DNA of 64,000 nucleotides from the IMG/VR virus record IMGVR_UViG_3300032242_003291, positions 253,260 to 317,259 of that record, one strand, 5' to 3'. Shown here piece by piece: positions 47,747 to 64,000 of the stretch. Position 1 is the first letter of the stretch; every line of letters begins with the position of its first letter. Both the position numbers and the translations under genes were made by a program. Under the pieces are notes generated by a model. It saw only the letters and a list, made by a program, of their open reading frames with translations. It was not told the origin of the DNA and ran no database searches.

Positions 47747-48595
47747 TTATTTTATAGCCATACCAATTCCACCTTTGGAATATATTTTATATCCATTATT
47801 CTCAAGATAAGAAACTAAAGTATTTTTTTCATCATTTTCCAAATTAAAATCTTCGTAGATAATGAAATTAGGTAATTCATCAATTTTAATCGACAATAGT
47901 AATTTAGCATCAAGTCCTTCAACGTCTAAATGTATCCAATCCAATTTTTTATTATACGCTGAAAAATGATTAAATATTAAGTCATTTATTGATATTGAAC
48001 TTCTTTTTGTAGAGTGTATTTCTTCTTTCTCCCAAAAATCAATAACCCTTTTTATCACGCTATTTGTATACCCTTTTCCTCCTTCGTAAAACTCGACATC
48101 AGAACCATCGGTTGTAATTAAATTATTTACAAGAGTTACCCCTTGTTTTCCTTCGTAGTTTTTTTTCAACTCAATGAATTGTTTTTCACTTCCTTCTACA
48201 AGAACCATATCTGACATAAAATTTCTAACTAGTGGTACCCATTCACCAAATTCACCGTCATGAGTTCCAATAACAAGACCTTTAGGTTTAATTCCTTTAT
48301 TAATTAGTGATTTACAATAAAGCCATAACGATTTGTAAAATATTGACCCGTGTTGAATTACATCCCACCTGTATTGATAAATAAAATTGCCTTGGGCATC
48401 TCTAACTACAACATCATTCATTTCAGTATTTGGAAATTTAGCCCACATTTCATTAGTTAAATTTGTTTCCCAAACAATTTTTTTTGATAAGGCATTTTTA
48501 ATTTGAAAATTAATCGGCAATTGTTCGGGTGTAAAAATACCCGTAAGGTTACCAGTTTCTATTTTAATATCATCGGAATAGATTATGTTAATCAT
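47747..48595 (-). CDS. FkbM-like methyltransferase
   Basis: VIGTHDG, LVEG and IHLDVEGLD. Confidence 0.75.
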   Translation of the reverse strand: MINIIYSDDIKIETGNLTGIFTPEQLPINFQIKNALSKKIVWETNLTNEMWAKFPNTEMNDVVVRDAQGNFIYQYRWDVIQHGSIFYKSLWLYCKSLINKGIKPKGLVIGTHDGEFGEWVPLVRNFMSDMVLVEGSEKQFIELKKNYEGKQGVTLVNNLITTDGSDVEFYEGGKGYTNSVIKRVIDFWEKEEIHSTKRSSISINDLIFNHFSAYNKKLDWIHLDVEGLDAKLLLSIKIDELPNFIIYEDFNLENDEKNTLVSYLENNGYKIYSKGGIGMAIK

Positions 48596-49137
48596 AAATG
48601 TTTGTCTATAAAGTTATCTATATTATCTGACCATAAGTCCATGGCCTCTGTTTTTATTCTATCTTCAGTCCAATCCCACCAAGAAATTTTTAATAAAGAT
48701 TCTATTTGTTTTTCACTGAATCGGTATTTTACTACTTTACTAGGATTTCCAACCACTATCGCATACGGTGGTACATCTTTAGCAATAGTCGCTGTTGAGC
48801 CAATTATTGCTCCGTGACCAATCTTAACTCCTGACATAATTGTAGACTTAGCGCCAATCCATACGTCGTTTCCAATTACAATATCCCCCTTACACGCAGG
48901 ATGACCCATACTCATATGCATGTCTGCAATCTCAGGTGTGACTGGTCCCCACAATTGTGAACTTGTTGTCACCCAATCAGGTCTATGATTTGCATGTAAA
49001 AAGAAATTGCAATCTCTTCCTATTGAAGTGTATTTTCCAACGTGGATATGGTATTGGTCACTCCAAGAAATTATGTTAACATTTCGGTCAAAATACGTTC
49101 CTCTATCCGCGTGCCAAAGATGAAGATTTTCTATCAT
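48592..49137 (-). CDS. CatB/Vat-like hexapeptide O-acetyltransferase
   Basis: IGNDVWIG, GVKIGHGAIIG, DVPPYAIVVGNP, WWDW. Confidence 0.9.
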   Translation of the reverse strand: MIENLHLWHADRGTYFDRNVNIISWSDQYHIHVGKYTSIGRDCNFFLHANHRPDWVTTSSQLWGPVTPEIADMHMSMGHPACKGDIVIGNDVWIGAKSTIMSGVKIGHGAIIGSTATIAKDVPPYAIVVGNPSKVVKYRFSEKQIESLLKISWWDWTEDRIKTEAMDLWSDNIDNFIDKHL

Positions 49138-52046
49138 TTTATTTGTAGTACGTTATTATAAAGTTTAGTTTTACTGTTTGTTCCAACTATTTCAATAATA
49201 TATGTCTTATCTGTTAAATGAATATTTGAAATGTAAAATAAAAAATATTGAAATAAATTTTGATTAGATAATGATTCGACAATTTCTCCATTAATTTGTT
49301 TTATTACAAAATCAACATTTTCGTTAATGCGTTTTGAGCCTAAAAAAGAATTTTTTTCAAAGAAAATTGTATCATTTTGATAATAAACCAAGACCTCTTC
49401 AGAATCTAAAACTGTGTTACCATAGTCTTTTTGTATACCTATAAATCTTTCTTTTGTTTTTAGTCCGTGAAATACTGCAATATCATTTTGATGGTTTGGT
49501 AATTTAACATAATTAGAAATTCCTGTCATATGGAACGGATGATTTACATCTGTAAACTTATCCATTTCAATATTATTTGTTTCTTCGATATCACATAAAT
49601 GTAAAGCTTTTTGAAGATTATGTTTTGATAAAACCACATTAGCAGAATCTTCGTCATGTAATGTAAAAATTCCAACTTCAGTTCCTTTATATTCTTGATA
49701 CATTTGAATTTGTTCTTCAAAAAACCATTTGGAGTTTGCATCAAACAACATTACATTAGTTTTTCTCCTTGGATATACACAAACATTAACTCCTGCTTTG
49801 TCTGCCAAAATACCAACAGTATCTGTCCATTTTTCGCCTTCCCTAATTCCACTTAGGTATAGTCTATCATGGATATGGGAATTAATCAACGGATAATTTT
49901 CTAATTGGTTGAAATAAGTTGATATGTCGTCAGCCGATACCGTTAGATAAATGTCACTATCAATAAAAATAAATTTTTTATCAGGATATTGATTGATAAC
50001 ATCAATCATTAATTTTGGTTTACTGCTGATTATATTTTCATCTCTACCCTTATCGTCTTTGTTACCTTTTTCAATATCAATTCTTCTTAAAATAAATTGC
50101 TCACTTGTTAAAAATTTAGATGGTATTTGATAATCAAAATTAATTGTATAAATGACACACTTTCTATTGGAATAATTATGTATTGATTCCATTAGATATT
50201 TTACTGTGGATGAATAATTTTCTGTAAATCCAAAAACCCAATAAAAATCATCTATGAATTTTTTATCATATTTGGCATAAATTTGATTTCCAACTTTATC
50301 AAATTTTGTATGTTCTTTTTTATAAAAATGATACAAAAATATTTCATCTTCGTTAATGAAGTTTTTACCTCCTCTCCAAACACAATCATATAAGTTTTTT
50401 CCAAATGAATTTGTGTTCATAGAATAAATCAACTTAACATCAAATTTATTCTTAGCCAATCTATCCATAACATCTTCTTCATAACATTTGACATCAGGAC
50501 TTTGAAAACATTCAATAAATTCATTTGTTTTATAAAATGTTCTTAACTCCTCAGTATTTTTTATTATTAAAAAAGGGCCCGATAACCTATCATGATATGT
50601 TTTTTCAGCGACAGAAATTATATCATGTTTTCCGAGTAAAGGGTAAACGTATTTAACAACATCACCAAATAAAGTATCAATATCATAACATCCAAAATAC
50701 TCATAATCCATTATATACTCCGAGAATATATCACCAAGAGATGCTTTCAAGTCACAAGTTTTCTTGTTATTTTTCAATTCAATTTTTGAACCAACTAAGT
50801 TTGATATTTTATCAACAATATTATTAAGGTCTGTTTTGATAACTCTATAATTTGGAGAATCTAGACTTATATCTTGGTCGGTTACAAATAAAAAATCAAC
50901 ATTTTTTAAATTTTTTGTTGTTTCATAATGAAACCAAAAATAATCGGGTATTTTACCAAGCCATAATTGTATCAAAACAATTTTTTTTCTGTAATCTTTT
51001 TGTAATATGATTTCTTTTGTTTCCCTATCACGAAAAACTATTTTTTTATCATCAAACCCTTTTTCGACAAATATCCAATAATTTAATTGAGGTTGTAAAT
51101 CAAGACTAAAAAAATCAATTAAATTATTTTCAAACCCTTCATATACTGAAATTTCAACTCTTTGCTCACTATATTTTTTATTTAAAAAATGAATCTTTTT
51201 TTTGTCGTCAGAAAAATAGGTTATTTCAATTTTTTTAGGATTATTTTTCATGTACCTATTTTTTATTTTATTTTCGATTGCTATCTTATATTCGTCAGCA
51301 TACTTATATTTTATTTTATCATTACTTTGAACTGAATTAACAGGTTTTTGCCATCTAGTTTTATCTGAATCTATTGATACCGCAAACTGTACTCTTTCAC
51401 ACTCTTCTATTAAATGATTGATACCATTGTGTTGGTAACATAATAAAAGAGCTCTCTCAATATTTAATGAATCTTGTTTTTCAAGAAATTTAAAATTATT
51501 TTCATCACATATATAATTACCTCCTCCTAATACTTTGTCTGAAAATTTACTGTCAAAAATATGATGTCTATCAGTGACACCGAAATATGATTCCGCTTCA
51601 GGAACGTATAACTTTCCCAAAGGTAATATAGGATGGTCTTTTACATAATAATAATCTGAACGAGATAATATTATCCTATCATATTCCAACAAGACATCTT
51701 TTTTATTTTTGAGGATATAATCTCTAAAAGCCAAAATTATAGCACCAGAACCGATGGCATTATCTATTCCACCCATAAAACCACTATGTTTATTAAGTTT
51801 GAAAATATAATCCCAGTTTCCTTCAAATGAATTTGAATAATAATCTCTCCAATTATCATATTCGGGCAACTCCCAAATATATTTTGCTCTTTTGTATAAT
51901 GAAGGAGTTTTATCATTTGTTTCTCCAAAACATAATGCTAAATCTGCATTATAAGGAGATAGAAGATGTTTATAAATTGTCTCCCAAGTTTCTTCACCAC
52001 CACGAGGATTACCCATTAATATGACTAAAGTTTTTTCCATTAACAA
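49134..52046 (-). CDS. multidomain glycosyltransferase-like protein (includes DUF6625-like and GT-A DxD domains)
   Basis: LSRSD..TDRH; WLGKIPDYF...KTCDLK...YDIDTLFG; SKP...FIDSD...DED. Confidence 0.7.
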   Translation of the reverse strand: MLMEKTLVILMGNPRGGEETWETIYKHLLSPYNADLALCFGETNDKTPSLYKRAKYIWELPEYDNWRDYYSNSFEGNWDYIFKLNKHSGFMGGIDNAIGSGAIILAFRDYILKNKKDVLLEYDRIILSRSDYYYVKDHPILPLGKLYVPEAESYFGVTDRHHIFDSKFSDKVLGGGNYICDENNFKFLEKQDSLNIERALLLCYQHNGINHLIEECERVQFAVSIDSDKTRWQKPVNSVQSNDKIKYKYADEYKIAIENKIKNRYMKNNPKKIEITYFSDDKKKIHFLNKKYSEQRVEISVYEGFENNLIDFFSLDLQPQLNYWIFVEKGFDDKKIVFRDRETKEIILQKDYRKKIVLIQLWLGKIPDYFWFHYETTKNLKNVDFLFVTDQDISLDSPNYRVIKTDLNNIVDKISNLVGSKIELKNNKKTCDLKASLGDIFSEYIMDYEYFGCYDIDTLFGDVVKYVYPLLGKHDIISVAEKTYHDRLSGPFLIIKNTEELRTFYKTNEFIECFQSPDVKCYEEDVMDRLAKNKFDVKLIYSMNTNSFGKNLYDCVWRGGKNFINEDEIFLYHFYKKEHTKFDKVGNQIYAKYDKKFIDDFYWVFGFTENYSSTVKYLMESIHNYSNRKCVIYTINFDYQIPSKFLTSEQFILRRIDIEKGNKDDKGRDENIISSKPKLMIDVINQYPDKKFIFIDSDIYLTVSADDISTYFNQLENYPLINSHIHDRLYLSGIREGEKWTDTVGILADKAGVNVCVYPRRKTNVMLFDANSKWFFEEQIQMYQEYKGTEVGIFTLHDEDSANVVLSKHNLQKALHLCDIEETNNIEMDKFTDVNHPFHMTGISNYVKLPNHQNDIAVFHGLKTKERFIGIQKDYGNTVLDSEEVLVYYQNDTIFFEKNSFLGSKRINENVDFVIKQINGEIVESLSNQNLFQYFLFYISNIHLTDKTYIIEIVGTNSKTKLYNNVLQIK

Positions 52047-52086: not shown

Positions 52087-52665
52087 TTATTTTTTTTTGA
52101 ATTTTGCAGGGACTCCAACGTAAACCCCACTTGTTACTATGTTTTTAACCACAGTCGCATTAGCACCTATTATTACATTTGAACTAACGTGTATTTTTTC
52201 TTTAATTGATGAGTTATTACCCATATAAACATTTGAACTAATATTAACGTTTCCAGATACAATAGAACCTGGCATCGCACTAAAATAATCTCCAATCTTT
52301 GAATCATGACCTATTTGAACTCCTCTATTTAGTATTGCATGTGAACCTATTTTTATATTTGTTGTCAGTATTGAATAGGCCCCAATAAAACTACCTTCTC
52401 CTACTTCAATATAATCCAAAATTAATGCAGTTGGATGAACAAATGTAAAAAATTGGAGCCCTTTAGGTAATCGTTGAACCATTTCATACCTATCCTTGGA
52501 GTTTCCAATTGCAATCATTGCAACATGTTCGTTTGGGTCTAACATAGATAATGGTGATGTTTCGCTGTCAACATATTTGTCGTCAACAAATCGTTCTAAT
52601 TTAACCCCCATTTGTGCCATTACTTCTCTTGCATGACCACCATTTCCAATTAATACTTTTTTCAT
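52087..52665 (-). CDS. NeuD/PglD-like sugar N/O-acetyltransferase
   Basis: IGNGGHAREV, AIGNSKDR, VHPTA, GHDS, hexapeptide repeats, GVPAK. Confidence 0.9.
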   Translation of the reverse strand: MKKVLIGNGGHAREVMAQMGVKLERFVDDKYVDSETSPLSMLDPNEHVAMIAIGNSKDRYEMVQRLPKGLQFFTFVHPTALILDYIEVGEGSFIGAYSILTTNIKIGSHAILNRGVQIGHDSKIGDYFSAMPGSIVSGNVNISSNVYMGNNSSIKEKIHVSSNVIIGANATVVKNIVTSGVYVGVPAKFKKK

Positions 52666-53306
52666 TGTTTGTAAATTTCGTATTTTGATAAATCTGGATA
52701 TGGTAATTCCAAATCTAAATTATCTTTTTTACTTCCATCCAGATTATAAAATTGAGTCATCATCAACAATCCTCTTGCTGCAAGTTCAGGCATCATATAA
52801 AAATTCCAACCTAACATATCAAAATTATCGTCATGGTAAGAACATTCTCTTCTACCACTAAATCTGGCTCTCTTAAACCATAACATCGCCTGATAGTCAT
52901 CAGTAATTATTGCGCCTCCTTTACTCAATTTTAATGTCTTATAAGGTCCTGTAAATGATAGACACATATGTGTCCCTGAGACGTACATATCCGCAGTAAA
53001 CCTCAATGCTGAGTCAACAACATTACTTGGAAATAATCTGTAAGCCCCTTTAATTGTTTTTCCTTCAACAGGTGTGAAATTAACCTTCAATCCTGCATGA
53101 ATTATCTCACAAGGAACCGAAGGATATGTCTTCGAAGGACAGTCTACAGTGTCTCCTGTAAATGACTTCTTAACATGTTTTTCATAATATAACGCTAAGA
53201 ATAATGCGTTACTCATATTATCTAATGCAATAGCATGAGGAGCACCTGTGTAATCACACAATGTTTTCTCAAAATCTTCAGTAATTTTATGTACACCTTG
53301 TGCCAT
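52662..53306 (-). CDS. shortened DegT/DnrJ/EryC1-family sugar aminotransferase
   Basis: FEKTLCDYTGAPHAIAL, VDSA, SFTGPYKTL..KGGAIITDD, GWNFYM. Confidence 0.8.
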   Translation of the reverse strand: MAQGVHKITEDFEKTLCDYTGAPHAIALDNMSNALFLALYYEKHVKKSFTGDTVDCPSKTYPSVPCEIIHAGLKVNFTPVEGKTIKGAYRLFPSNVVDSALRFTADMYVSGTHMCLSFTGPYKTLKLSKGGAIITDDYQAMLWFKRARFSGRRECSYHDDNFDMLGWNFYMMPELAARGLLMMTQFYNLDGSKKDNLDLELPYPDLSKYEIYKQ

Positions 53307-53387: not shown

Positions 53388-54353
53388 TTATGACCGATAC
53401 ATAATCTCGACGTCATTTATCAAAGTTAAATTTTCCTCAATAGTGAAATCAATGTTAAAATATTTTATATCATTAATGAATGCCTTTGCGTTTTTTATAT
53501 CTGTAATTTCAACTTTTTTTGTATTCCAAGTTTTTGGTTGAATTTTTAAATTTGTAAAAAAATTGTCATTGATTATTAAATCAAGAGAAACTTCAATACT
53601 TGTTCCGTTATGAATAAAATAATTTAAATCATCACCACTTCTAAAAAAAGTAAAAGCAATTTTACTTAAAATATTTTCTGACATAATTTCACATTTTCCA
53701 AAATCTAAGAATTTCTCTAACTCTTGGTGATTCAATTTTAATACTTTTTGATTTTCAAATAACAACTCATAAACAGTTCTTTCACTTGAAAATAAATCAC
53801 TATCTAAATGAACTTTTTTATACAAGTCAAAGATTTTTTTATAGTTGTATTCAAATGTTTCAAAGTGAAATTTTTCCAAATTTATTGAAATTAAATTTCC
53901 AATAATATTACCTCTGTCGCTCTCATAGATAACAACATCGTTGTTTTCAAGTTTACTTTTGTTTATTTCAAGAATACTCAAATCTTTGATTAGTGCGTCA
54001 TATTCAAGAACATGAACTATTTTATATTCGGCATTTTTTAAAAAGGACAAAGGAAGTTGCCACAATCTAAGTATCGCAGGTACATGACTTGAAGGAAAGA
54101 AATAAGATTTATGCATAATATAAAAATCATCGTTGGCAAAGAATCTTTTTCCTTTCAATGAGTTGTCAGTAATAAATGGATTATTTTTATCATAAAAATA
54201 AAAATCAACATCTTCTACAATATCAAAAGGTAACACACAATGACTGGCAATACAAATTTTATACTTTGAATTAATTTGACGAATTAATTTTTTTAAAATA
54301 AGTTTTTTTTCGCTTGTGTTTGAAAAATCCGTTATAAGTACTATCTCACTCAT
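53388..54353 (-). CDS. glycosyltransferase-like hypothetical protein
   Basis: IASH, YDKNN, LEYDAL (DxD-like); lies in the glyco-locus. Confidence 0.55.
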   Translation of the reverse strand: MSEIVLITDFSNTSEKKLILKKLIRQINSKYKICIASHCVLPFDIVEDVDFYFYDKNNPFITDNSLKGKRFFANDDFYIMHKSYFFPSSHVPAILRLWQLPLSFLKNAEYKIVHVLEYDALIKDLSILEINKSKLENNDVVIYESDRGNIIGNLISINLEKFHFETFEYNYKKIFDLYKKVHLDSDLFSSERTVYELLFENQKVLKLNHQELEKFLDFGKCEIMSENILSKIAFTFFRSGDDLNYFIHNGTSIEVSLDLIINDNFFTNLKIQPKTWNTKKVEITDIKNAKAFINDIKYFNIDFTIEENLTLINDVEIMYRS

Positions 54354-54404: not shown

Positions 54405-55169
54405 TTAAACCCAAAAATCGATATTTAGCCATTCGTCATTTACTGTATGACAATTTATTGATGGTTGTACTGTCCCTATTTTACAACTCTCACTATTAAT
54501 TAAATTAATTAAATCTTCGTCATTTTTATAGTTTAAAATACACGGATATTTATAAAAATTTTCATTTAGTATTGTTTTTCTACCCATTAATGCCATTTCT
54601 ATTGCTGTTGCCATTCCATTACCGTCAGACAAATTTAAGTTAAGAAAAGATTTATCGTAATAATTATTTTTCAAATAATTTATATCATAGTAATCATTAA
54701 TATTAAAATGATTCGTAGTTATTATTTCATAATTAATTTGTTTTTGTATTTGTTTTAATTTTTCAACGTTAAATTGATTACTCCATCCATTTTTAAAACC
54801 AGTATATGCATATATTTTATCCCCCAAAACATTAGGTTCAAACAATGAGTAATCTTTAACTTCTATCGTTACGTTTCTACAATTAACATTATCAGGTATT
54901 TTTGAAATTAATCTAACTTCTTCTAATATATTAATAATGAACAAATCATCTGTATTTGTGACTATATCAAAATTTGGTAGGTCATATGGGTTTGTAAGAA
55001 ATATAAATTTGTATGATTTATGATTTTGTATTTGATGAGATAATTCGTTTCCGCCAAAAAATATACATGGTTTGTTCACATCATAATATTCATCAAAATT
55101 ATATCTTTCAATAAAACCTTTTTTAAAAAAATTAACAGAAGGGGCAACAAGTGTTTGAGATATTCTCAT
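54405..55169 (-). CDS. glycosyltransferase-like hypothetical protein
   Basis: DGNGMATAIEMALMGRK resembles the GT-B E-x7-E region. Confidence 0.5.
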   Translation of the reverse strand: MRISQTLVAPSVNFFKKGFIERYNFDEYYDVNKPCIFFGGNELSHQIQNHKSYKFIFLTNPYDLPNFDIVTNTDDLFIINILEEVRLISKIPDNVNCRNVTIEVKDYSLFEPNVLGDKIYAYTGFKNGWSNQFNVEKLKQIQKQINYEIITTNHFNINDYYDINYLKNNYYDKSFLNLNLSDGNGMATAIEMALMGRKTILNENFYKYPCILNYKNDEDLINLINSESCKIGTVQPSINCHTVNDEWLNIDFWV

Positions 55170-56765: not shown

Positions 56766-59054
56766 ATGAGTAAATCAAAAATTTTTGCACATGGTTCCTA
56801 TGTTGGTAACACAGGATATAATCAACACACAAGAGATTTTTTCAGACATCTTAGTAAACACGCAGATATAAAAGTTAGAAACTTTACGATAGGTAATTCT
56901 TGGAAGGGTTATTCCGAAAGACCACATGATAACGAAACTTACTTTAATGCAACCGATGAAAAACTATTATATCAACAAGTTCTTTGGAATGGTGACAACA
57001 CAAGAAGTAATTTTCCAATTTATTCAGATAAATCAAAAAATTTCACACCTGATGTTAACATTATATTATGTGAAACAAATCACCACCTTTTTTATGACCA
57101 ATACAATGGTCCGAAAATTGCATATAACGTATGGGAGTCTACATTGCAACCTAAAGAATACTTCAACAAATTAAAAGAATTTGATGAAATGTGGGTACCA
57201 TCAAAATGGCAAAGAGACTGTACCATAGCTCAAGGTTATGACCCAAACAAAATTAAAGTCGTTCCTGAAGGTGTTGATGTTAATACATTTTACCCCGATA
57301 ACTCAGTAAATCATCCATTAACAAAAGACAAGTTTACATTCTTTTTAGCGGGAAGATGGGATTATAGAAAATCTATCAAGGAAATTATTGAAACATTTAT
57401 AAAGACTTTTAATAACAACGAACCTGTTGAGTTAATTGTTTCTGTTGATAATCCATTTTCGAATGATGGATTAAACTCAACTGAAGAAAGATTGAAACAT
57501 TATGGGTTAGAAGATGATAGAATTAAAATTCTCCATTTCCCACCAAGAGAGGAATACATTAGATTGTTAAAATCTTGTAATGTATTTGTATCATGCGCAA
57601 GAGCAGAAGGTTGGAACTTACCACTTATTGAGGCTATGGCTTGTGGTACTCCGTCAATTTATTCAGATTGTTCAGGTCAGTTGGAATTTGCAGAGGGTAG
57701 AGGTATACCTGTTAAAATATCGCATGAATTACCTGTAAGTGCTAGTACATATAATCACTTCAACGATAATGTTGGAAACTATTATGAACCTGATTTTTAT
57801 GATTTGGGTATCAAAATAAAAAATGTGTTTGAGGATTATAAAAAGTATAAAATTTTTGCATTAGTAGAATCAGAACAAATTAGAGAAGAGTTTAGTTGGG
57901 AAAATGTTGCTAAAATAGGTATTGATACTATTAATGATTTTTTAGACAGAAAACCTTGGTTAAATAAACCAATCAAAACTAATGAAATTAAAATTAGTTA
58001 TTTAGATGGTCCAAGAGTTGAAGTATCAGGTGACGAAAAGAAAGATTATTTTGTTGAATTTATTGATAGTACCGATGGAAAGGTAATACATTCTCAAACT
58101 ATTAGTAATAACATGTGGGTTTCTTGTAGTAAAAAATACTATATTCCTTGGATAATTAAAATTAATGGTGAAGTTTACGATGAACTGAATTTAGAAGGAA
58201 AAACGGTAATGATTTCACTTGAATCAAAAGCTTTAGGTGATACTATATCTTGGGCACCATATGCTGTTGAATTTCAAAAGAAACATAATTGTAAGGTGTT
58301 ATTGTCCACTTTCAAAAATAACTTCTTTGAAGGTTTAGAATCATATAAAAATATAACCTTTATCAAACCAGGTGAATCTCATGGTTGTGATGTAATATAC
58401 AGAATCGGTTGGTTTAAAAAAGATAAGAAATGGGAAGATAGAGACAAAAATCCAAATCAACCAAACTTGATTCCACTTCAACAAGCAGCAACCGACATTT
58501 TAGGTTTAGAATATAAAGAACTTAACTTTGGTTTAAATTTTGAAAAAAAGGAAAAACCTATGGAAAAAGATTATGTAGTGTTCGCACCAAATGCAACTTC
58601 AGGTTGTAAAGAGTGGGATTATAATCATTGGGTGACATTATCTAAACTCATTAAAGAATTAGGATATGATGTTTTAACATTAACACAAAAACCATTTCAC
58701 ATAGATGGTGTATTAAATATTTGGGATGAACCTTTGGACGTTGTTGCAAACTACCTTTATCATGCCAAGGCTTACGTAGGGTTGGGTTCGGGATTATCTT
58801 GGTTTAATTGGGCTTTAGGGAATTATTCATTTATGGTTAATGGTTTTGCAAGACCTGACCACGAATTTACAACAAACATTACAAAAATTTATAACGAAAA
58901 TACTTGTATATTCTGTTGGAATGATGAAGTTTTTGTTTTTGACCCTGGTAATTGGAATTGGTGTCCAGTATATGAAGGGACAAAAAAACAACACGTTTGT
59001 CAAAGGTCTATTACACCATTACAAGTATTTCAACAACTAACAACTAAAATATAA
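56766..59054 (+). CDS. GT4 glycosyltransferase fused to a TibC/AAH-like protein O-heptosyltransferase
   Basis: EGWNLPLIEAMACG (GT4); SKKYY, SKALGDTISW, VGLGSGLSW, CIFCWN...WCP...C..SITP. Confidence 0.85.
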   Translation: MSKSKIFAHGSYVGNTGYNQHTRDFFRHLSKHADIKVRNFTIGNSWKGYSERPHDNETYFNATDEKLLYQQVLWNGDNTRSNFPIYSDKSKNFTPDVNIILCETNHHLFYDQYNGPKIAYNVWESTLQPKEYFNKLKEFDEMWVPSKWQRDCTIAQGYDPNKIKVVPEGVDVNTFYPDNSVNHPLTKDKFTFFLAGRWDYRKSIKEIIETFIKTFNNNEPVELIVSVDNPFSNDGLNSTEERLKHYGLEDDRIKILHFPPREEYIRLLKSCNVFVSCARAEGWNLPLIEAMACGTPSIYSDCSGQLEFAEGRGIPVKISHELPVSASTYNHFNDNVGNYYEPDFYDLGIKIKNVFEDYKKYKIFALVESEQIREEFSWENVAKIGIDTINDFLDRKPWLNKPIKTNEIKISYLDGPRVEVSGDEKKDYFVEFIDSTDGKVIHSQTISNNMWVSCSKKYYIPWIIKINGEVYDELNLEGKTVMISLESKALGDTISWAPYAVEFQKKHNCKVLLSTFKNNFFEGLESYKNITFIKPGESHGCDVIYRIGWFKKDKKWEDRDKNPNQPNLIPLQQAATDILGLEYKELNFGLNFEKKEKPMEKDYVVFAPNATSGCKEWDYNHWVTLSKLIKELGYDVLTLTQKPFHIDGVLNIWDEPLDVVANYLYHAKAYVGLGSGLSWFNWALGNYSFMVNGFARPDHEFTTNITKIYNENTCIFCWNDEVFVFDPGNWNWCPVYEGTKKQHVCQRSITPLQVFQQLTTKI

Positions 59055-59935
59055 TGAAGACAATATTAATTGAACTTATGTCAGGTTCTCTTGGTGACAC
59101 CATAGCAATTATGCCATGTGTAGAATATTTTATATCAAAAAATGATGATGATGTTCTTTTGAAGATAAATCCAAGATATCATTTTTTATTCACTAACTCA
59201 TACCCAACAATTAAATTCTACCAAGGCAACGAACATTTTGATAAAAAAATTCAACTACATTATAATTTTAATTTACCCCTACAAACAGGATTTGCACAAC
59301 AACTTGGATATGTTAATTGGACCTATATCAGACCAAAAGTCGATGTTAATGTAAAAGAAAGACCTATAAAATCCAAGTATGTTTCAATTAGCATACATTC
59401 AACATCTCAACTCAAATATTGGAATCATCCAATTGGAAAAAAATCACAACCATTATCTCCTTATTGGACCGAATTAAACGGATTATTGAGAAAGTCAGGT
59501 TATACTCCTGTTGTTGTAGAAAAAGATGAAATGTTTGGAATACCCCCACTCAGAAATGGTATGCCATCAAAATCAAATAATAAAATTGGTCTTAGTTTAG
59601 AAGACACAATAAATTATATATATCACTCAGATTTTTTCATAGGACTATCTTCAGGACTATCTTGGCTTGCACATGCAATGGGAAAAAAAGTTGTAATGAT
59701 ATCAAACTTCTCGGATGAAACTCATGAATTTGATTTATCCTGTGAAGATTATATAAGAATAACTAATAAATCAGTTTGTCATGGTTGTTGGAATAAAATT
59801 AATCAAGATTATAATTTTGATTCATCTGATTGGTATTGGTGTCCCAAACATAAAGATACTCCAAGAGAGTTTGAATGTCATACTTCAATAACACCTGATT
59901 ATGTTATTGAACAAATTAAACAATGGATAAATTAA
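59054..59935 (+). CDS. TibC/AAH-like protein O-heptosyltransferase
   Basis: SLGDTIA, KYWNHP, FIGLSSGLSWLAHAMGKKVVMISNFS, CHGCWN...WCPKH...FECHTSITP. Confidence 0.88.
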   Translation: MKTILIELMSGSLGDTIAIMPCVEYFISKNDDDVLLKINPRYHFLFTNSYPTIKFYQGNEHFDKKIQLHYNFNLPLQTGFAQQLGYVNWTYIRPKVDVNVKERPIKSKYVSISIHSTSQLKYWNHPIGKKSQPLSPYWTELNGLLRKSGYTPVVVEKDEMFGIPPLRNGMPSKSNNKIGLSLEDTINYIYHSDFFIGLSSGLSWLAHAMGKKVVMISNFSDETHEFDLSCEDYIRITNKSVCHGCWNKINQDYNFDSSDWYWCPKHKDTPREFECHTSITPDYVIEQIKQWIN

Positions 59936-59939: not shown

Positions 59940-60938
59940 ATGTTTGAATTATTAAGTTACGATATACAAAAAGATGAAAAAAAAATTGTAATACAAATTT
60001 TCTTTCGTAACAACTCGGACAACTCCTATGATGTTAATACATTATTTGAGGATTCAATCTTCAATCAATGTCAGAAATTTAGAACTATGACAGTAAACCC
60101 AAATTCAACTCATTGGGTTTCTTGGGATTTATCTCAGGATTTGGATACCGCATCAGATGAGATAAATGGATTACAGTTGAGGGCATTATGGGGTGCCAAT
60201 TTCAAAATATTAATTGATGACAAAGTTGTTGCAGAATTTCCATTAAAATATACTTTTACCAATTTAAATCTAAGAAAAGGATTGAAAAATTTTTCACCAT
60301 TCAATAAGAAAAAGTTTTGGATTCTTGGCGATTCTCATTCAGGATTTTACACAAACACGTCCCCTGATTATTTAAAAACATCAAAATACGACATAATACC
60401 GTCAGGTTTATTGGGGCTATCGTTAAATAACTTTTTAAATGAAGAATTTGATAGATGGTTTGACTCTTTACCAATTTGGGATAATGATATTGTTGCAATT
60501 GATGTTGGTGAACTCGATATAAGATGTGGTCTTTTTCACTTTGCAAGTAAAAATGACTTAAATGTATATTCCATTACTGATGATTTATTAAAAAGATACT
60601 TTGATTTTCTATTAAGATTTAAACAAAAGTACAAAAATGAGTTGGTTATATTGACACCTAACAGACCAATAAAAGATGGGTGCCTCGATGGAAACGCAGA
60701 ATATTTCAAATTAACCATATCTAATACAAGTGAAAGACTTGAACTATGGAATTATTTCAATATTAAATTAAAATTATTCTGTGAAGAAAACTCAATAAAA
60801 TACTGGGATATCAAACACATGTATACAGATAAAGATGGAACATTGTTCAATGACATACTTTATTACAACGATATACACATAAAAGTCAAAGAACCAATGT
60901 TGTTTGACTTAAGACATAAAATAGAAAATAATTTTTAA
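59940..60938 (+). CDS. SGNH/GDSL-like esterase or acyltransferase
   Basis: ILGDSH, GELDIR, DIH. Confidence 0.65.
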   Translation: MFELLSYDIQKDEKKIVIQIFFRNNSDNSYDVNTLFEDSIFNQCQKFRTMTVNPNSTHWVSWDLSQDLDTASDEINGLQLRALWGANFKILIDDKVVAEFPLKYTFTNLNLRKGLKNFSPFNKKKFWILGDSHSGFYTNTSPDYLKTSKYDIIPSGLLGLSLNNFLNEEFDRWFDSLPIWDNDIVAIDVGELDIRCGLFHFASKNDLNVYSITDDLLKRYFDFLLRFKQKYKNELVILTPNRPIKDGCLDGNAEYFKLTISNTSERLELWNYFNIKLKLFCEENSIKYWDIKHMYTDKDGTLFNDILYYNDIHIKVKEPMLFDLRHKIENNF

Positions 60939-60939: not shown

Positions 60940-61659
60940 ATGGATTTATCTAAATTTGATTGGGGTTGGATGGACAAACCAACAACTAGAACACTATCAA
61001 GTAAAGGGATTACAAAGTCATATGGACAATGGCATAAAGACATCATTACAGATGAAATATTCGAACAAAAATTATATGAACAATTTTTTCCTGTTGAAGA
61101 AGGAGATATTGTTATGGACTTCGGTGCAAGTGTAGGTCCATTTACATATTCCATCTTAGATAAGAAACCAAAACATGTTTATTGTTTTGAGCCGAGTCCA
61201 CAAGAAATTAGTACATTAATTAAAAACACTCAAGACGGACCTGTTACAGTAATAAATAAGGGTATTTCTGACGTTGAGGGTGAGTTTGAATTTAATTTGT
61301 TTGGTGTTGAAGATGGAACAAGAATCGCTAAATCAACTACGTTTGATTCCATTAAAAAAGAGTTTAATATTACTAAAATTGATTTTATCAAAACAGATTG
61401 TGAAGGTGGTGAATACTCTATTTTTAACAATAAAAATATTTTTTGGATTAAAGAAAATGTTAGAAAGGTAGTCGGTGAGTGGCATTTAGATAGTCCTCAA
61501 AGAAAGGAGCAATTCAGAGTTTTCAGAGATACTTATTTACGTTTGTTTCCAAATATTGAAGTTTTTGCTATTGATGGTGTCAATATTAAATGGGAATTAT
61601 GGAAAGACCATTTTATTGATTATTATCGTCAAATTATAGTTTATATCGATAATAGATAA
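60940..61659 (+). CDS. FkbM-family methyltransferase
   Basis: VMDFGASVG, FEP, IKTDCEGGE, GEWH. Confidence 0.9.
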   Translation: MDLSKFDWGWMDKPTTRTLSSKGITKSYGQWHKDIITDEIFEQKLYEQFFPVEEGDIVMDFGASVGPFTYSILDKKPKHVYCFEPSPQEISTLIKNTQDGPVTVINKGISDVEGEFEFNLFGVEDGTRIAKSTTFDSIKKEFNITKIDFIKTDCEGGEYSIFNNKNIFWIKENVRKVVGEWHLDSPQRKEQFRVFRDTYLRLFPNIEVFAIDGVNIKWELWKDHFIDYYRQIIVYIDNR

Positions 61660-61689: not shown

Positions 61690-61695
61690 ATTTTA

Positions 61696-64000
61696 TTACT
61701 TTATTGGTTTGTATTCTAAAAGAACCTTTTCAATATCTTTACGTTCAGCTTGAATGAAGAAACTTGTATTTATTTTTTCTGTCTCAGAATCTATATACAC
61801 TTTATTATCTTCGACTTTAACAACGTAGTGAATTGTTGCTGTCCCAATTGGTGTAAGTTGAACTGTGATAGTATCTTCGTGTACTAAATTTACCCAATAT
61901 TCAGGTAATTCAATTACATTTGAAGTTACTATACCTCTTACGTAAACTCCATGTTCTGGTCCTTCTAACACACCGTATCTTAATCTGAATCCTTCTTTTG
62001 TTGGGTGAGTGATATCAAATGATTTAGATGCCGCTGTTAAATTACCTGTCATCGTAGTATCTCCTGTCACATTCAAGGTTGCTCCATCATATCTTAGACC
62101 TGCATTACCTTGAACCGTGCCAGCTGTTCCCGTTGCAGTTACAATCCAAGTATTTGTATTGTTATTGATAACTGCTGAGTTTCCTGACGTACCAGAACTT
62201 CCTGAGCTACCACTCGAACCAGATGTTCCAGAACTTCCTGACGTGCCGCTAGCACCTGAAACACCACTTGTTCCTGAAGAACCAGATGAACCTGAGCTAC
62301 CACTTGTTCCTGAGCTTCCTGAAGAACCAGATGTTCCTGAGCTTCCTGAAGAACCAGATGTTCCTGAGCTACCACTTGAACCAGATGTTCCTGAGCTACC
62401 ACTTGAACCAGATGTTCCTGAAGAACCAGATGAACCTGAGCTACCACTTGTTCCCGAAGAACCGCTCGAACCAGAAGTTCCTGAGCTACCACTTGAGCCA
62501 CTTGTTCCTGATGAACCAGAGCTACCACTTGTTCCTGATGAACCTGATGAACCTGAGCTACCACTTGTTCCTGAGCTACCGCTTGAACCAGACGTCCCTG
62601 ATGAACCAGACGTTCCAGAGCTTCCTGAAGTACCACTTGAGCCACTTGTTCCTGATGAGCCAGAGCTACCACTTGTTCCTGATGAGCCAGAGCTACCACT
62701 TGAACCAGACGTTCCTGAAGAACCTGAACTACCACTTGTTCCTGAAGAACCACTTGAGCCAGATGTTCCTGAACTACCAGATACACCTCTTAAACCTGCA
62801 ATAGATATTGTCCATGAAGACGCTAAAGTAGTTCCAGAGTTATAATCAGCAGCAATCGCGAAAGTTGTTCCTGTTATACTTACTGTACCTTCAAAGAAAT
62901 TAGAAGTAGTATTTATCGCTCTTACTCTGTCACCTGTAACGAATGCACCTTGTTGATTCACAGTTAAAGTTATTGTACCAGTAGATGCTGGAGTTGCGGA
63001 TGTAGTTGAAGTTACATTATTATAACCAAGTCCTGAAGTTCCTGATGTTCCTGATGAGCCAGAGCTACCACTTGTTCCTGATGAGCCTGAACTACCACTT
63101 GTTCCAGAAGAACCTGATGAACCTGAGCTACCAGATGTTCCTGATGAACCTGATGAACCTGAAGTTCCTGAGCTACCACTTGAGCCACTTGTTCCTGATG
63201 AACCTGATGAACCTGAGCTACCACTTGTTCCAGAAGAACCTGAGCTACCACTTGTTCCTGATGAACCAGATGTTCCAGAGCTTCCTGAAGTACCACTTGA
63301 GCCACTTGTTCCTGAAGAACCTGAGCTACCACTTGTTCCAGAAGAACCAGATGAGCCAGAGCTACCACTTGTTCCCGAAGAACCTGAGCTACCACTTGTT
63401 CCTGATGAACCAGATGTTCCAGAGCTTCCTGAAGTACCACTTGAGCCACTTGTTCCTGATGAGCCAGAGCTACCACTTGTTCCTGAAGAACCCGAGCTAC
63501 CCGATGTTCCTGATGAACCAGATGTTCCAGAGCTTCCTGAAGTACCACTTGAGCCACTTGTTCCTGAAGAACCTGAAACGCCTCTCACACCTGCGATAGA
63601 TATTGTCCATGAAGACGCTAAAGTCGTTCCCGAGTTATAATCAGCTGCAATTGCGAAAGTTGTTCCAGTTATACTCACAGTACCTTCAAAGAAGTTAGAT
63701 GTAGTGTTCACTGCTCTTACTCTATCACCTGTTATAAACGCTCCTTGTTGATTTACGGTTAATGTTATAGTTCCTGTTGATGCTGGTGTTACCGATGTAG
63801 TTGAAGTTACATTACTATAACCAAGTCCTGATGTTCCTGATGTTCCTGAAGAACCTGAGCTACCACTTGTTCCTGAGCTACCACTTGAGCCAGATGTTCC
63901 TGATGAACCTGAGCTACCACTTGTACCTGAGCTACCGCTTGAACCACTTGTTCCAGAAGAACCAGATGAGCCAGAGCTACCACTTGTTCCTGAGCTACCG
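61696..64000 (-). CDS. Gly-Ser/Thr repeat fibre protein, 5'-truncated by the window
   Basis: Frame is open to the window edge; (GSS/GTS)n blocks, duplicated ~85-aa domain, C-terminal KSFDITHP...LEGPEHGVYVRG...AERKD fibre domain. Confidence 0.9.
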   Translation of the reverse strand, partial: GSSGTSGSSGSSGSSGTSGSSGSSGTSGSSGSSGTSGSSGSSGTSGSSGSSGTSGTSGLGYSNVTSTTSVTPASTGTITLTVNQQGAFITGDRVRAVNTTSNFFEGTVSITGTTFAIAADYNSGTTLASSWTISIAGVRGVSGSSGTSGSSGTSGSSGTSGSSGTSGSSGSSGTSGSSGSSGTSGSSGTSGSSGTSGSSGTSGSSGSSGTSGSSGSSGSSGTSGSSGSSGTSGSSGTSGSSGTSGSSGTSGSSGSSGTSGSSGSSGSSGTSGSSGSSGTSGSSGSSGTSGSSGSSGSSGTSGSSGSSGTSGSSGSSGTSGTSGLGYNNVTSTTSATPASTGTITLTVNQQGAFVTGDRVRAINTTSNFFEGTVSITGTTFAIAADYNSGTTLASSWTISIAGLRGVSGSSGTSGSSGSSGTSGSSGSSGTSGSSGSSGSSGTSGSSGSSGTSGSSGTSGSSGTSGSSGTSGSSGSSGTSGSSGSSGSSGTSGSSGSSGTSGSSGSSGTSGSSGSSGTSGSSGSSGSSGTSGSSGSSGTSGSSGSSGTSGSSGSSGTSGSSGSSGTSGSSGSSGSSGTSGVSGASGTSGSSGTSGSSGSSGSSGTSGNSAVINNNTNTWIVTATGTAGTVQGNAGLRYDGATLNVTGDTTMTGNLTAASKSFDITHPTKEGFRLRYGVLEGPEHGVYVRGIVTSNVIELPEYWVNLVHEDTITVQLTPIGTATIHYVVKVEDNKVYIDSETEKINTSFFIQAERKDIEKVLLEYKPIK

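What the first reader, a model, noticed from the sequence alone, without database searches (positions are those of the whole stretch)
47747..64000. Candidate phage virion O-glycosylation system: protein glycosyltransferases and sugar-tailoring enzymes sandwiched between Ser/Thr-rich structural substrates
Seen: 14 kb encoding two TibC/AAH-like transferases, GT4 and GT-A-like domains, a DegT plus NeuD/PglD pair, a second acetyltransferase, an SGNH enzyme and four methyltransferases. It is flanked by mucin-like Pro/Thr proteins on the left and a (Gly-Ser/Thr)n fibre on the right. Known: TibC/AAH hyper-glycosylate Ser residues in repetitive autotransporters; DegT plus PglD-type enzymes make acetamido-deoxy sugars; Mimiviridae use similar clusters to glycosylate fibrils. 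Inference: the phage builds a methylated and acetylated glycan coat on its fibres, for stability, shielding or host-range tuning.
Basis: partly seen in the sequence, partly recalled or inferred. Interest (0 to 1): 0.88.

Follow-up and report, generated by a model that had tools for sequence, protein, structure and literature searches.

The report
Phage sugar-coating kit for serine-rich fibre
A 317-kb uncultured phage carries a 14-kb set of soluble sugar-transfer and sugar-tailoring enzymes, led by two relatives of the bacterial protein-glycosylating enzyme TibC, next to a collagen-like fibre gene made almost only of Gly-Ser/Thr-Ser/Thr repeats; the same enzyme-repeat pairing recurs in many phages and in bacterial chromosomes, so the repeat is very probably the enzyme's target, though no glycosylation has been shown.

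Summary
Window 47747-61659 encodes 13 soluble proteins. Two are TibC/AAH-family (BAHT) transferases: both pass the curated NCBIfam cutoff and match PDB 4RAP at E about 1e-32 to 1e-35. One of them is fused to a GT4 domain. The rest include a three-module protein with a GT-A-like domain, a PglD/NeuD acetyltransferase, a truncated 214-aa DegT, a second hexapeptide acyltransferase, a GDSL-like protein, and three solid plus one weak methyltransferase.

The right-hand neighbour is a collagen-type (Gly-Ser/Thr-Ser/Thr)n gene, cut off by the contig end.

Of 115 fetched loci with a TibC-like gene, 81 hold such a repeat protein; of 133 loci without one, none does. In bacterial chromosomes, 18 of 38 TibC-like genes lie within 3 kb of small (Gly-Thr/Ser-Ser)n proteins, several with lipoprotein-type signal peptides.

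Catalytic and iron-finger residues are invariant, but the Arg that reads adenine in ADP-heptose is lost, so the donor sugar is unknown.

Caveats: only 5 of 34 Ser/Thr-collagen genes in an unbiased sample have TibC nearby; the Pro/Thr proteins show no specific link; nothing is shown biochemically.

Verdict: a new variant of protein O-glycosylation, well supported by comparative genomics.

The parts
56766..59054 (+). 762-aa fusion protein. The N-terminal part is a GT4 glycosyltransferase (aa about 100-383). The C-terminal part is a TibC/AAH-family (BAHT) domain with its N-terminal beta-barrel (aa 406-759) but with the beta-hairpin thumb deleted.
   Evidence: Pfam PF00534 57 bits, TibC_1st, Glyco_transf_9. 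TIGR04414 218 bits against cutoff 200. PDB 4RAP E=5e-35, with D110, T226, K230, W305 and the four Cys aligned and R286 replaced by V. Thumb gap seen in alignment A1.
59054..59935 (+). 293-aa stand-alone TibC/AAH-family catalytic domain. It lacks the N-terminal beta-barrel and keeps thumb-length sequence.
   Evidence: PDB 4RAP residues 98-376, E=6.8e-32. TIGR04414 201 bits against 200. 29% identical to the C-half of the 762-aa protein. R286 replaced by T, P300 by S.
61696..64000 (-). Proposed acceptor: a collagen-type (Gly-Ser/Thr-Ser/Thr)n fibre protein. (GSS/GTS)n tracts alternate with repeated globular spacers of about 75 aa and end in a 144-aa fibre-tip domain. The gene is 5'-truncated by the contig end.
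   Evidence: Pfam Collagen 187 bits. X/Y positions are S 208 and T 45 of 264. Frame open to 63999. Tail-fibre PHROGs. C-terminal domain 57.7% identical to the 'putative tail fiber-like protein' of Flavobacterium phage immuto.
61661..61689 (.). Bidirectional intrinsic-terminator-like hairpin between the + strand transferase operon and the convergent fibre gene.
   Evidence: 13-bp stem with T-runs on both strands.
60940..61659 (+). FkbM-family methyltransferase. After GT4, it is the most constant partner of the TibC-like gene.
   Evidence: PF05050 44 bits, TIGR01444 62.8 bits. Its homolog lies directly downstream of TibC in many loci and is fused to it in L040/L044.
59940..60938 (+). 332-aa protein with an N-terminal beta-sandwich and a C-terminal GDSL/SGNH-like alpha/beta domain. 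Possibly an esterase or O-acetyl-handling enzyme.
   Evidence: No Pfam, NCBIfam or PDB sequence hit. AF2 pLDDT 66; Foldseek hits 4hf7/3p94 GDSL-like lipases at TMt 0.5-0.58. GDSH 130-133 invariant.
55872..56576 (-). 234-aa protein, weakly similar to Methyltransf_24. A tentative fourth methyltransferase.
   Evidence: PF13578 E=0.035, 15.4 bits, below cutoff. phrog_24975, unknown function. 80% identical homolog in L004.
55244..55870 (-). Class I SAM methyltransferase of the Methyltransf_24 / CmcI / TylF-like type.
   Evidence: PF13578 75.9 bits.
54405..55169 (-). 254-aa protein of unknown function.
   Evidence: No hit in Pfam, NCBIfam or PHROGs. No homolog in the related loci.
53388..54353 (-). 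321-aa protein of unknown function, with weak homologs in other TibC loci.
   Evidence: No family hit. 24-34% identical ORFs in L012, L015, L018, L025 and L042.
52662..53306 (-). 214-aa 'mini-DegT'. The PLP lysine motif is retained, but about 40 internal residues and the C-terminal domain are missing. It is the most conserved protein of the cluster.
   Evidence: PF01041 52 bits over profile positions 26-98 only. Perosamine synthetase 3BN1 alignment. 85-94% identity in relatives, all at 214 aa.
52087..52665 (-). NeuD/PglD-type sugar N-acetyltransferase.
   Evidence: PglD_N and Hexapep. TIGR03570 160.6 bits.
49134..52046 (-). 970-aa protein of three modules: an N-terminal GT-A-like domain (aa 1-260), DUF6625 (aa 354-600), and a C-domain (aa 590-970) with a DSD motif.
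   Evidence: Module boundaries from homolog coverage. AF2 and Foldseek for the N-domain. DUF6625 97 bits. C-domain homolog fused to TibC in L024/49/66/83.
48592..49137 (-). Hexapeptide-repeat acyltransferase (the second acetyltransferase).
   Evidence: PF00132 40.9 bits.
47747..48595 (-). FkbM-family methyltransferase.
   Evidence: PF05050 27 bits against cutoff 22.7.
40250..47465 (-). Three Cys-rich modular proteins (984, 224 and 1106 aa) joined by TPTPTP-type linkers. They may be additional acceptors, but no specific link to the enzymes was found.
   Evidence: Translations. No Pfam hit. Homologs sit beside TibC in some clades, but PT-rich proteins are also in 28 of 80 control loci.

Best explanation
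This is a cytoplasmic protein O-glycosylation module of a jumbo phage.

Proposed mechanism:
- Two TibC/AAH-family GT-B transferases start the glycan. They attach a sugar from a nucleotide-sugar donor to Ser/Thr hydroxyls in the (Gly-Ser/Thr-Ser/Thr)n tracts of the fibre protein encoded convergently next door. This would occur while the fibre is still in the host cytoplasm, before virion assembly.
- The fused GT4 domain and the GT-A-like/DUF6625 protein extend the glycan.
- The FkbM and Methyltransf_24 methyltransferases, the hexapeptide acyltransferases and the GDSL-like protein tailor it. The mini-DegT and PglD may supply or modify an amino sugar.
- The result would be a densely glycosylated, bottle-brush-like fibre.

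Shown: family membership, conserved catalytic residues, solubility of all components, and recurrent enzyme-repeat adjacency and domain fusions.

Inferred: that the repeat is the acceptor, the order of steps, the donor sugar (probably not ADP-heptose), virion location, and biological role.
For: 1. Family membership. Both enzymes pass the curated TIGR04414 cutoff and align to TibC over the whole catalytic domain.

2. Conserved residues. The residues that mutagenesis showed to be needed in TibC (PMC4358343) are nearly invariant in 85 distinct phage and 40 bacterial domains. These are Asp110, Thr226, Lys230, Trp305 and Cys339/342/358/370.

3. Adjacency in phages.
- 49 of 80 IMG/VR TibC loci hold a Ser/Thr-type collagen ORF, against 0 of 80 primase control loci from the same clade.
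- Over all fetched loci the counts are 81 of 115 with TibC and 0 of 133 without.
- 21 of 30 TibC clusters at 70% identity are positive.
- Among 80 loci sharing the fibre-tip domain, all 23 with Ser/Thr collagen have TibC, and none of the 52 without repeats does.

4. Internal control. The phage's three other collagen fibres (2118-8891) have ordinary Q/A/P/T composition (16-25% Ser/Thr) and lie about 39 kb or more from the cluster.

5. Independent context. In Gammaproteobacterial chromosomes, 18 of 38 TibC-like genes have a small (Gly-Thr/Ser-Ser)n protein within 3 kb, often 80-180 bp away. Several of these carry lipoprotein-type signal peptides, and the surroundings are ordinary cellular genes. 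The only shared feature is the repeat.

6. Rosetta-stone fusions. GT4-TibC occurs in three distant phages. TibC-FkbM and 970-aa-C-domain-TibC fusions also occur.

7. Solubility. None of the 17 proteins has a predicted membrane segment, and no Und-P transferase, flippase, polymerase or ligase is present. This fits direct cytoplasmic protein glycosylation, as known for BAHTs.

8. Precedent. Known BAHT enzyme-substrate pairs (TibC-TibA, AAH-AIDA-I) are also encoded side by side (established knowledge).
Against: - There is no biochemical evidence of any glycosylation.
- Arg286, which contacts adenine N1 and whose Ala mutant is inactive in TibC, is Thr or Val here and is Arg in only 6 of 85 phage domains. 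The donor is therefore unknown.
- The 293-aa enzyme lacks the beta-barrel and the 762-aa enzyme lacks the thumb. Both features are needed for the TibC dodecamer.
- In an unbiased sample of Ser/Thr-collagen ORFs in IMG/VR, only 5 of 34 with 4 kb or more visible downstream have a TibC-like gene. Only a few more have any other glycosyltransferase nearby. The repeat therefore does not need TibC.
- About 30% of TibC loci show no Ser/Thr repeat within 10 kb.
- The cluster encodes no nucleotidyltransferase or 4,6-dehydratase, and the DegT is truncated.
- Virion location of the fibre rests on homology to 'putative' tail-fibre annotations.
Confidence: 0.6

Rival explanations
1. The enzymes glycosylate a different virion protein, such as the capsid, tail tube or the Pro/Thr-linker proteins. 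The Ser/Thr collagen gene would be next door only because both sit in a hypervariable structural-accessory island.
For: - Pro/Thr-linker proteins lie immediately beside TibC fusions in some loci that lack Ser/Thr collagen (L027, L049, L066, L086), and they flank the cluster here.
- Within one phage clade (primase 82% identical) the cluster varies from 14 kb to a single fused gene, which is typical of a variable island.
- Mycobacteriophage glycosyltransferases act on capsid and tail-tube proteins (reference 80 in PMC12582341; details from my own knowledge).
Against: - The bacterial pairing with small (GTS)n proteins cannot be explained by a phage structural island.
- No locus among the 133 without TibC has the repeat.
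- PT-rich proteins are equally present in control loci.
Confidence: 0.15
2. The cluster remodels a host cell-surface glycan (LPS, capsule or S-layer glycan) during infection. The purpose might be superinfection exclusion or preventing progeny from re-adsorbing to infected cells.
For: - GT4, FkbM, PglD/DegT and hexapeptide acyltransferases are all common in O-antigen and capsule loci (established knowledge; NCBIfam side hits).
- GC is lowest in the cluster (0.26-0.30), as in many glycan islands.
Against: - There is no membrane protein, Und-P transferase, flippase, polymerase or ligase.
- The lead enzymes belong to a family known only as protein O-glycosyltransferases (PMC4358343).
- The conserved partner is a repeat protein, not a polysaccharide gene.
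Confidence: 0.07
3. The TibC-like proteins are not active transferases here. They may be structural or chaperone-like partners of the repeat protein, and the fibre is unglycosylated.
For: - The adenine-contact Arg is lost, and each paralogue lacks either the beta-barrel or the thumb.
- Most Ser/Thr collagens in phages have no TibC nearby.
Against: - The catalytic base, the beta-phosphate-binding Thr/Lys, the sugar-binding Trp and the four Fe-finger Cys are near-invariant over 125 domains.
- There are recurrent fusions to a GT4 domain and to methyltransferases.
Confidence: 0.08
4. The enzymes modify phage DNA (glycosylated, hypermodified bases).
For: Large phages often glycosylate DNA. The window also carries two DNA methyltransferases.
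Against: - There is no similarity to known DNA glucosyltransferases.
- The lead family is protein-specific.
- The methyltransferases in the cluster are FkbM and Methyltransf_24 types, not DNA methyltransferases.
- The repeat-protein pairing also occurs in bacteria.
Confidence: 0.02

Closest known systems
BAHT family: TibC (ETEC) and AAH (DAEC), 'autotransporter strand-loop-strand O-heptosyltransferases' (TIGR04414; PDB 4RAP/4RB4)
   Same: - Homologous over the whole GT-B catalytic domain.
- Catalytic Asp, Thr/Lys beta-phosphate site, Trp305 and the four-Cys iron finger are conserved.
- Soluble, cytoplasmic enzymes.
- Encoded beside a highly repetitive Ser-rich protein, with many acceptor sites per substrate.
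   Different: - The acceptor is not an autotransporter beta-helix with 19-residue repeats. It is a Gly-X-Y tract with Ser/Thr at X and Y.
- The adenine-reading Arg286 is lost, so ADP-heptose is doubtful.
- One paralogue lacks the beta-barrel and the other lacks the thumb, so the dodecamer ring is doubtful.
- Fused to GT4, FkbM or other transferase domains.
- Phage-borne.
Mycobacteriophage virion glycosylation (Freeman et al. 2023, cited as reference 80 in PMC12582341)
   Same: Phage-encoded glycosyltransferases beside structural genes, thought to decorate virion proteins in the host cytoplasm.
   Different: From my own knowledge: different glycosyltransferase families, acceptors are C-terminal extensions of capsid and tail-tube subunits, and no BAHT enzyme or collagen-like acceptor is involved.
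BclA-type collagen-like exosporium glycoproteins of the Bacillus cereus group
   Same: A collagen-like Gly-X-Thr repeat region is heavily O-glycosylated with an oligosaccharide capped by a methylated, acylated amino-deoxy sugar. That sugar's pathway uses a DegT-type aminotransferase, an acyltransferase and a methyltransferase (PMC6222408 abstract; PMC9614988 reference 237; pathway details from my own knowledge).
   Different: A cellular spore-surface protein with a Pro-rich GPT repeat. Its initiating transferases are unrelated to BAHT.
Mimivirus fibril glycosylation clusters (PMC9614988)
   Same: A virus-encoded cluster of sugar-nucleotide tailoring enzymes, several glycosyltransferases and a methyltransferase that builds a glycan coat on surface fibrils.
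   Different: A eukaryotic giant virus. Polysaccharides sit on a GMC-oxidoreductase-type carrier, complete nucleotide-sugar pathways are encoded, and there is no BAHT enzyme.

Membership tests
BAHT (TibC/AAH) protein O-glycosyltransferases | Sequence reaches the curated equivalog threshold of TIGR04414 | tested here: met
   218.0 and 201.0 bits against a cutoff of 200. The Mel-JY01 homolog scores 317 bits.
BAHT (TibC/AAH) protein O-glycosyltransferases | Catalytic base Asp110, beta-phosphate ligands Thr226/Lys230, sugar-contact Trp305 | tested here: met
   All aligned in both window proteins. Near-invariant in 85 phage and 40 bacterial domains.
BAHT (TibC/AAH) protein O-glycosyltransferases | Arg286 hydrogen-bonding adenine N1 (ADP-sugar specificity) | tested here: not met
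   Thr in the 293-aa protein and Val in the 762-aa protein. Arg in 6 of 85 phage domains and 14 of 40 bacterial ones.
BAHT (TibC/AAH) protein O-glycosylt­ransferases | Four-cysteine iron-finger motif (Cys339/342/358/370) | tested here: met
   All four Cys are invariant. Iron binding itself cannot be tested here.
BAHT (TibC/AAH) protein O-glycosyltransferases | N-terminal beta-barrel and beta-hairpin thumb that build the dodecameric ring | tested here: not met
   The 293-aa protein starts at TibC residue 98, so it has no barrel. The 762-aa protein has the barrel but a gap of about 10 residues at the thumb, and Phe265/Val266 are not conserved. Oligomeric state cannot be tested here.
BAHT (TibC/AAH) protein O-glycosyltransferases | Acceptor is an autotransporter passenger domain encoded next to the enzyme | tested here: not met
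   The window has no autotransporter. The conserved neighbour is a (Gly-Ser/Thr-Ser/Thr)n protein.
BAHT (TibC/AAH) protein O-glycosyltransferases | Transfers heptose from ADP-heptose | not testable with these tools
   No heptose-pathway gene was seen in the window or beside the Mel-JY01 homolog. Loss of Arg286 argues against it.
GT4 glycosyltransferases | Passes Pfam Glycos_transf_1 gathering score | tested here: met
   57 bits against 26.4, aa 182-308 of the 762-aa protein.
Collagen triple-helix repeat proteins | Uninterrupted Gly-X-Y repeats passing Pfam PF01391; trimeric helix | tested here: inconclusive
   The repeat passes Pfam at 187 bits, in tracts of 63 and 69 triplets. There is no Pro at X/Y, so triple-helix formation is uncertain and cannot be tested here.
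DegT/DnrJ/EryC1 sugar aminotransferases | Full fold-type-I PLP enzyme of about 370 aa with the Schiff-base lysine | tested here: inconclusive
   Passes Pfam (52 bits against 19.8) and the lysine aligns. However, only 214 aa are present, with an internal deletion and no C-terminal domain.
NeuD/PglD sugar N-acetyltransferases | PglD_N domain plus left-handed beta-helix | tested here: met
   PF17836 26.9 bits against 23.4, and PF00132 46.9 bits. TIGR03570 scores 160.6 against 160.8, marginally below.
SGNH/GDSL hydrolases | Flavodoxin-like fold with the GDS(X) block I Ser and block V Asp/His | tested here: inconclusive
   GDSH is invariant. Fold match to GDSL-like lipases is TMt 0.5-0.58 from a pLDDT-66 model. 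Block V is D-x-H rather than D-x-x-H. No sequence-family hit.
GT-A fold glycosyltransferases | Rossmann-like GT-A fold with an acidic metal-binding motif | tested here: inconclusive
   The N-domain model (pLDDT 87.8) hits GT6/GT8 enzymes at prob 1.0 and E about 1e-6, but TM is only about 0.4. Asp131 and Asp159 are invariant. There is no sequence hit to PDB.

The most novel reading that the evidence does not exclude
A subfamily of TibC-like enzymes forms a widespread, so far undescribed cytoplasmic O-glycosylation system dedicated to (Gly-Ser/Thr-Ser/Thr)n tracts. It would act on fibres of jumbo phages and cyanophages and on small secreted proteins of methanotrophs and other Gammaproteobacteria, several of which have lipoprotein-type signal peptides. 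It would use a donor other than ADP-heptose. Dense glycosylation would replace hydroxyproline in stiffening or stabilising a proline-free collagen-like helix.
Probability: 0.35. Interest if true: 0.85.

Novelty: new variant of a known kind. Interest (0 to 1): 0.72.

Why it matters
Virion glycosylation in phages is known from very few systems, and BAHT enzymes are known only as virulence-associated modifiers of autotransporter adhesins.

If the link holds, it would matter in four ways:
- It gives this enzyme family a second, much more widespread class of substrate. At least 570 stretches in IMG/VR encode a relative, and the word-index protein search returned 1,765 hits.
- It explains an odd, proline-free class of collagen-like phage fibres.
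- It points to glycan-coated fibres as a variable surface trait in jumbo phages of lakes and oceans.
- It offers a compact, soluble, sequon-defined (GSS/GTS) glycosylation tool that can be tested directly in laboratory E. coli.

A cultured carrier, Microcystis phage Mel-JY01, makes the claim testable now.

Tried and rejected
- **Near-identity DNA search.** The cluster had no match in 50,697 GenBank phage records. Only four records hold a TibC-like gene by tblastn.
- **PHROGs.** No family for either TibC-like protein or for five other cluster proteins.
- **PDB searches.** The 332-aa protein (sequence) and the GT-A-like domain (profile) found nothing useful. Structure prediction was needed.
- **Low-threshold Pfam scan** of the unknown ORFs and of the 970-aa C-domain gave only noise.
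- **Sigma-70 promoter scan.** No more sites than in shuffled sequence, so operon starts are not defined. No tRNAs to hint at a host.
- **Heptose pathway in Mel-JY01.** The 'cytidylyltransferase-like' neighbour and four other neighbours of the Mel-JY01 enzyme hit no NCBIfam model, so no heptose pathway was found there.
- **Pro/Thr proteins as specific partners.** Rejected as unsupported, because they are equally frequent in control loci.
- **'Every Ser/Thr collagen comes with TibC'.** Rejected by the unbiased pattern scan.
- **Host.** Not determined. The best cultured relatives of the primase and the fibre tip are Flavobacterium phage immuto (31% and 58% identity), followed by cyanophages.
- **Literature.** The searches found no description of phage BAHT enzymes. 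The Freeman 2023 paper is not held in the library.
- **Not done.** A phylogeny including classical TibC/AAH sequences, and a census on whole contigs.

Full report
**Where the window comes from.** The window is the last 64 kb of IMG/VR contig IMGVR_UViG_3300032242_003291 (317,259 bp, 100% match). GC is about 30%. It carries phage and jumbo-phage genes: DNA primase, SbcCD-like nuclease, a large DNA methyltransferase, a Dam methylase, a sigma-70 factor, DnaJ, an amidase and collagen-like tail-fibre proteins. No GenBank phage is close at the DNA level. The best cultured relatives of the primase (about 31% identity) and of the fibre-tip domain (58%) are Flavobacterium phages of the 'immuto' group, followed by cyanophages. 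The host is not established.

- The - strand block 47747-56576 encodes the following, listed by rising window coordinate (transcription runs the other way):
  - an FkbM methyltransferase;
  - a hexapeptide acyltransferase;
  - a 970-aa three-module protein;
  - a PglD/NeuD acetyltransferase;
  - a 214-aa DegT-like protein;
  - two unknown proteins (321 and 254 aa);
  - a Methyltransf_24 enzyme;
  - a 234-aa protein with only a sub-threshold methyltransferase hit.
- The divergent + strand block 56766-61659 encodes a 762-aa GT4-TibC fusion, a 293-aa TibC-like protein, a 332-aa protein and a second FkbM methyltransferase.
- The 332-aa protein has no sequence-family hit. A medium-quality model (pLDDT 66) shows a beta-sandwich plus an alpha/beta domain that matches GDSL-like lipases (TM 0.5-0.58), and it has an invariant G-D-S-H.
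- The N-domain of the 970-aa protein gives a confident model (pLDDT 87.8). Its best PDB matches are GT-A transferases of families GT6 and GT8, at modest TM of about 0.4.
- The DegT-like protein keeps the PLP lysine motif but is about 40% shorter than the family norm. It is nevertheless the best-conserved protein of the cluster, at 85-94% identity and always 214 aa.
- None of the 17 proteins in or beside the cluster has a predicted membrane helix.
- A strong bidirectional terminator-like hairpin (61661-61689) separates the + operon from the convergent fibre gene.

**The two lead enzymes.** Both match TibC (PDB 4RAP) at E about 1e-32 to 1e-35 and pass the curated NCBIfam equivalog cutoff. I checked the residues described in the TibC structure paper (PMC4358343).

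- Conserved: the catalytic base Asp110, the beta-phosphate ligands Thr226 and Lys230, the sugar-contact Trp305 and the four iron-finger cysteines. All are present in both proteins and near-invariant in 85 distinct phage and 40 bacterial homologs.
- Different:
  - Arg286 hydrogen-bonds adenine N1 and explains ADP specificity in TibC. It is Thr or Val here and is Arg in only 6 of 85 phage domains.
  - The 293-aa protein lacks the N-terminal beta-barrel.
  - The 762-aa protein lacks the beta-hairpin thumb.
- Conclusion: these are BAHT-family catalytic domains, but 'heptosyltransferase' and 'dodecamer' should not be assumed.

**The neighbour on the right.** ORF 61696-63711 passes Pfam Collagen (187 bits). 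Its X and Y positions are 96% Ser/Thr. The frame is open to the last base of the window, which is also the contig end, so the gene is truncated. Relatives reach 1,600-3,300 aa. It ends in a 144-aa domain shared with 'putative tail fiber-like' proteins and hits tail-fibre PHROGs. The phage's three other collagen-like fibres (2118-8891) have ordinary Q/A/P/T composition. They serve as an internal control.

**Co-occurrence.**

- The enzyme is common. The word-index protein search returned 1,765 hits, and at least 570 stretches in IMG/VR encode a relative.
- Of 80 IMG/VR loci fetched around the enzyme, 49 hold a collagen ORF with at least 75% Ser/Thr at X/Y. It is usually convergent and starts 0.1-3 kb past the enzyme.
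- Of 80 control loci fetched around the primase of the same phage clade, none does.
- Of 80 loci that share the fibre-tip domain, all 23 with Ser/Thr collagen have the enzyme and none of the 52 without repeats does. The three loci with 'mixed' collagen still contain GSS/GTS blocks, and the single ordinary collagen lacks the enzyme.
- Over all loci fetched up to that point, 81 of 115 with the enzyme and 0 of 133 without it hold at least 12 G[ST][ST] triplets. After clustering the enzyme at 70% identity, 21 of 30 clusters are positive. These counts are not independent events, so I give no p-value.
- Distant carriers show the same pairing: Microcystis phage Mel-JY01 and a 735-kb huge phage.
- Some 'negative' loci carry other Ser-rich repeats beside the enzyme: (SSSYAL)n, or TP-linker proteins.

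**Bacterial chromosomes.** A scan of one genome per species found 38 homologs, mostly in Methylococcales, Arenicellales and other Gammaproteobacteria.

- In 18 of them, an ORF with at least 8 G[ST][ST] triplets lies within 3 kb, often 80-180 bp away.
- These are small (130-330 aa) proteins with signal peptides, several of lipoprotein type. They carry (GTS/GSS)n tracts, and many end in an acidic tail.
- The surrounding genes in one locus I scanned are ordinary cellular genes: a LysR regulator, pirin, a deaminase and a two-component system.
- The only element common to the phage and bacterial contexts is the repeat. This is the strongest argument that the repeat is the acceptor.

**Functional links inside the cluster.**

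- GT4-TibC fusions occur in three distant phages.
- A TibC-FkbM fusion occurs in L040/L044. The FkbM homolog is the gene directly after TibC in many loci.
- A homolog of the 970-aa C-domain is fused upstream of TibC in 1,456-aa proteins.
- PglD and mini-DegT travel together in a subset of loci.
- Within one phage clade the module ranges from a single 1,234-aa fused enzyme to the 14-kb cluster seen here. It is therefore a hypervariable region.

**Evidence that weakens the claim.**

- An unbiased pattern scan for (GGN WSN WSN)x12 shows that Ser/Thr collagen ORFs are frequent in IMG/VR. Only 5 of 34 with at least 4 kb visible past their 3' end have the enzyme.
- Among 120 neighbours in 27 such loci, only about eight are other glycosyltransferases. 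Capsid, portal, tail-tube and baseplate genes are also present. That places these fibres in structural modules, but it shows the repeat does not require TibC.
- PT-rich proteins are not specifically linked to the enzyme.
- The cluster encodes no nucleotide-sugar activation step.
- Nothing has been tested at the bench.

**Comparison with known systems.** The system works like the TibC-TibA and AAH-AIDA-I pairs: a cytoplasmic enzyme hyper-glycosylates a repetitive neighbour. It fails three defining features of that family as described, namely the autotransporter acceptor, the adenine-reading Arg, and the full ring-forming architecture. Its logic resembles mycobacteriophage virion glycosylation, BclA-type collagen-like glycoproteins and Mimivirus fibril clusters, but the initiating enzyme is different. 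No paper in the searchable library links heptosyltransferases with phages or collagen-like proteins. I rate it a new variant of a known kind.

**Verdict.**

| Item | Assessment |
|---|---|
| Observation | Confirmed |
| Repeat fibre is the acceptor of the TibC-like enzymes | About 0.7 |
| Full model (elaborated, methylated or acylated glycan on a virion fibre) | About 0.6 |
| Interest | 0.72 |

Noticed in passing
window 2118-8891 (- strand): Three tandem collagen-like tail-fibre genes (607, 628 and 1023 aa) with ordinary G-P/A/Q/T repeats. By eye, their C-termini look like the self-cleaving intramolecular-chaperone type (SDRRLK motif). GC is 46-48% against a 30% background.
   Followed up: partly
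window 61696-64000 and relatives (L009, L030, L174, L178, L180): Several contigs of about 317-321 kb from this phage clade end inside the Ser/Thr collagen gene. The repeat probably breaks assemblies, so the gene's true 5' end may sit at the other contig end.
   Followed up: partly
L001 (Microcystis phage Mel-JY01, PP395634.1) 2-3049 +: A 1016-codon open frame with S/T-rich Gly-X-Y repeats is not annotated. The record instead annotates CDSs on the opposite strand (1-651 and 739-2298), which look like shadow ORFs. The 1226-aa GT4-TibC protein is labelled only 'methyltransferase FkbM'.
   Followed up: partly
L250, L254, L259, L263, L274, L276, L286 (Gammaproteobacteria MAGs), about 8.2-8.9 kb and 10.9-11.7 kb: Small proteins with lipoprotein-type signal peptides carry (GTS/GSS)n tracts and end in poly-Asp/Glu tails. 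They occur in pairs flanking the TibC-like gene, and a DUF6502 protein sits between them in L276.
   Followed up: partly
L012 11187-12047, L013 1679-2539, L016 2389-3036: A different Ser-rich repeat, (S-S-S-Y-A-L)n, is encoded directly after the TibC-like/FkbM pair in loci that lack Ser/Thr collagen.
   Followed up: no
window 62117-62845 (+), 62139-62786 (-), 62268-62804 (+), 63006-63599 (+), 63012-63557 (-): Long 'ORFs' in other frames and on the other strand of the collagen repeats (PE/LP-rich, QV-rich and similar). These are repeat shadows, not genes.
   Followed up: yes
window 24157-24954, 15078-16004, 14025-14864, 25584-27929: The phage encodes its own sigma-70-type factor, a full DnaJ (J domain, Zn finger and C-terminal domain), a Dam-type methylase and a 781-aa DNA methyltransferase.
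   Followed up: no
window 12668-13981 and 1271-2125: A 437-aa protein has weak leucine-rich-repeat hits at its C-terminus. A 284-aa protein has a weak, sub-threshold Peptidase_M91 hit. Function is unknown for both.
   Followed up: no
window 49134-52046 versus L004 2312-4192 and L005 1941-4109: The GT-A-like N-domain of the 970-aa protein is absent from the orthologs in close relatives (626 and 722 aa). It exists widely as a stand-alone family of about 260-300 aa with no Pfam model or solved structure.
   Followed up: partly
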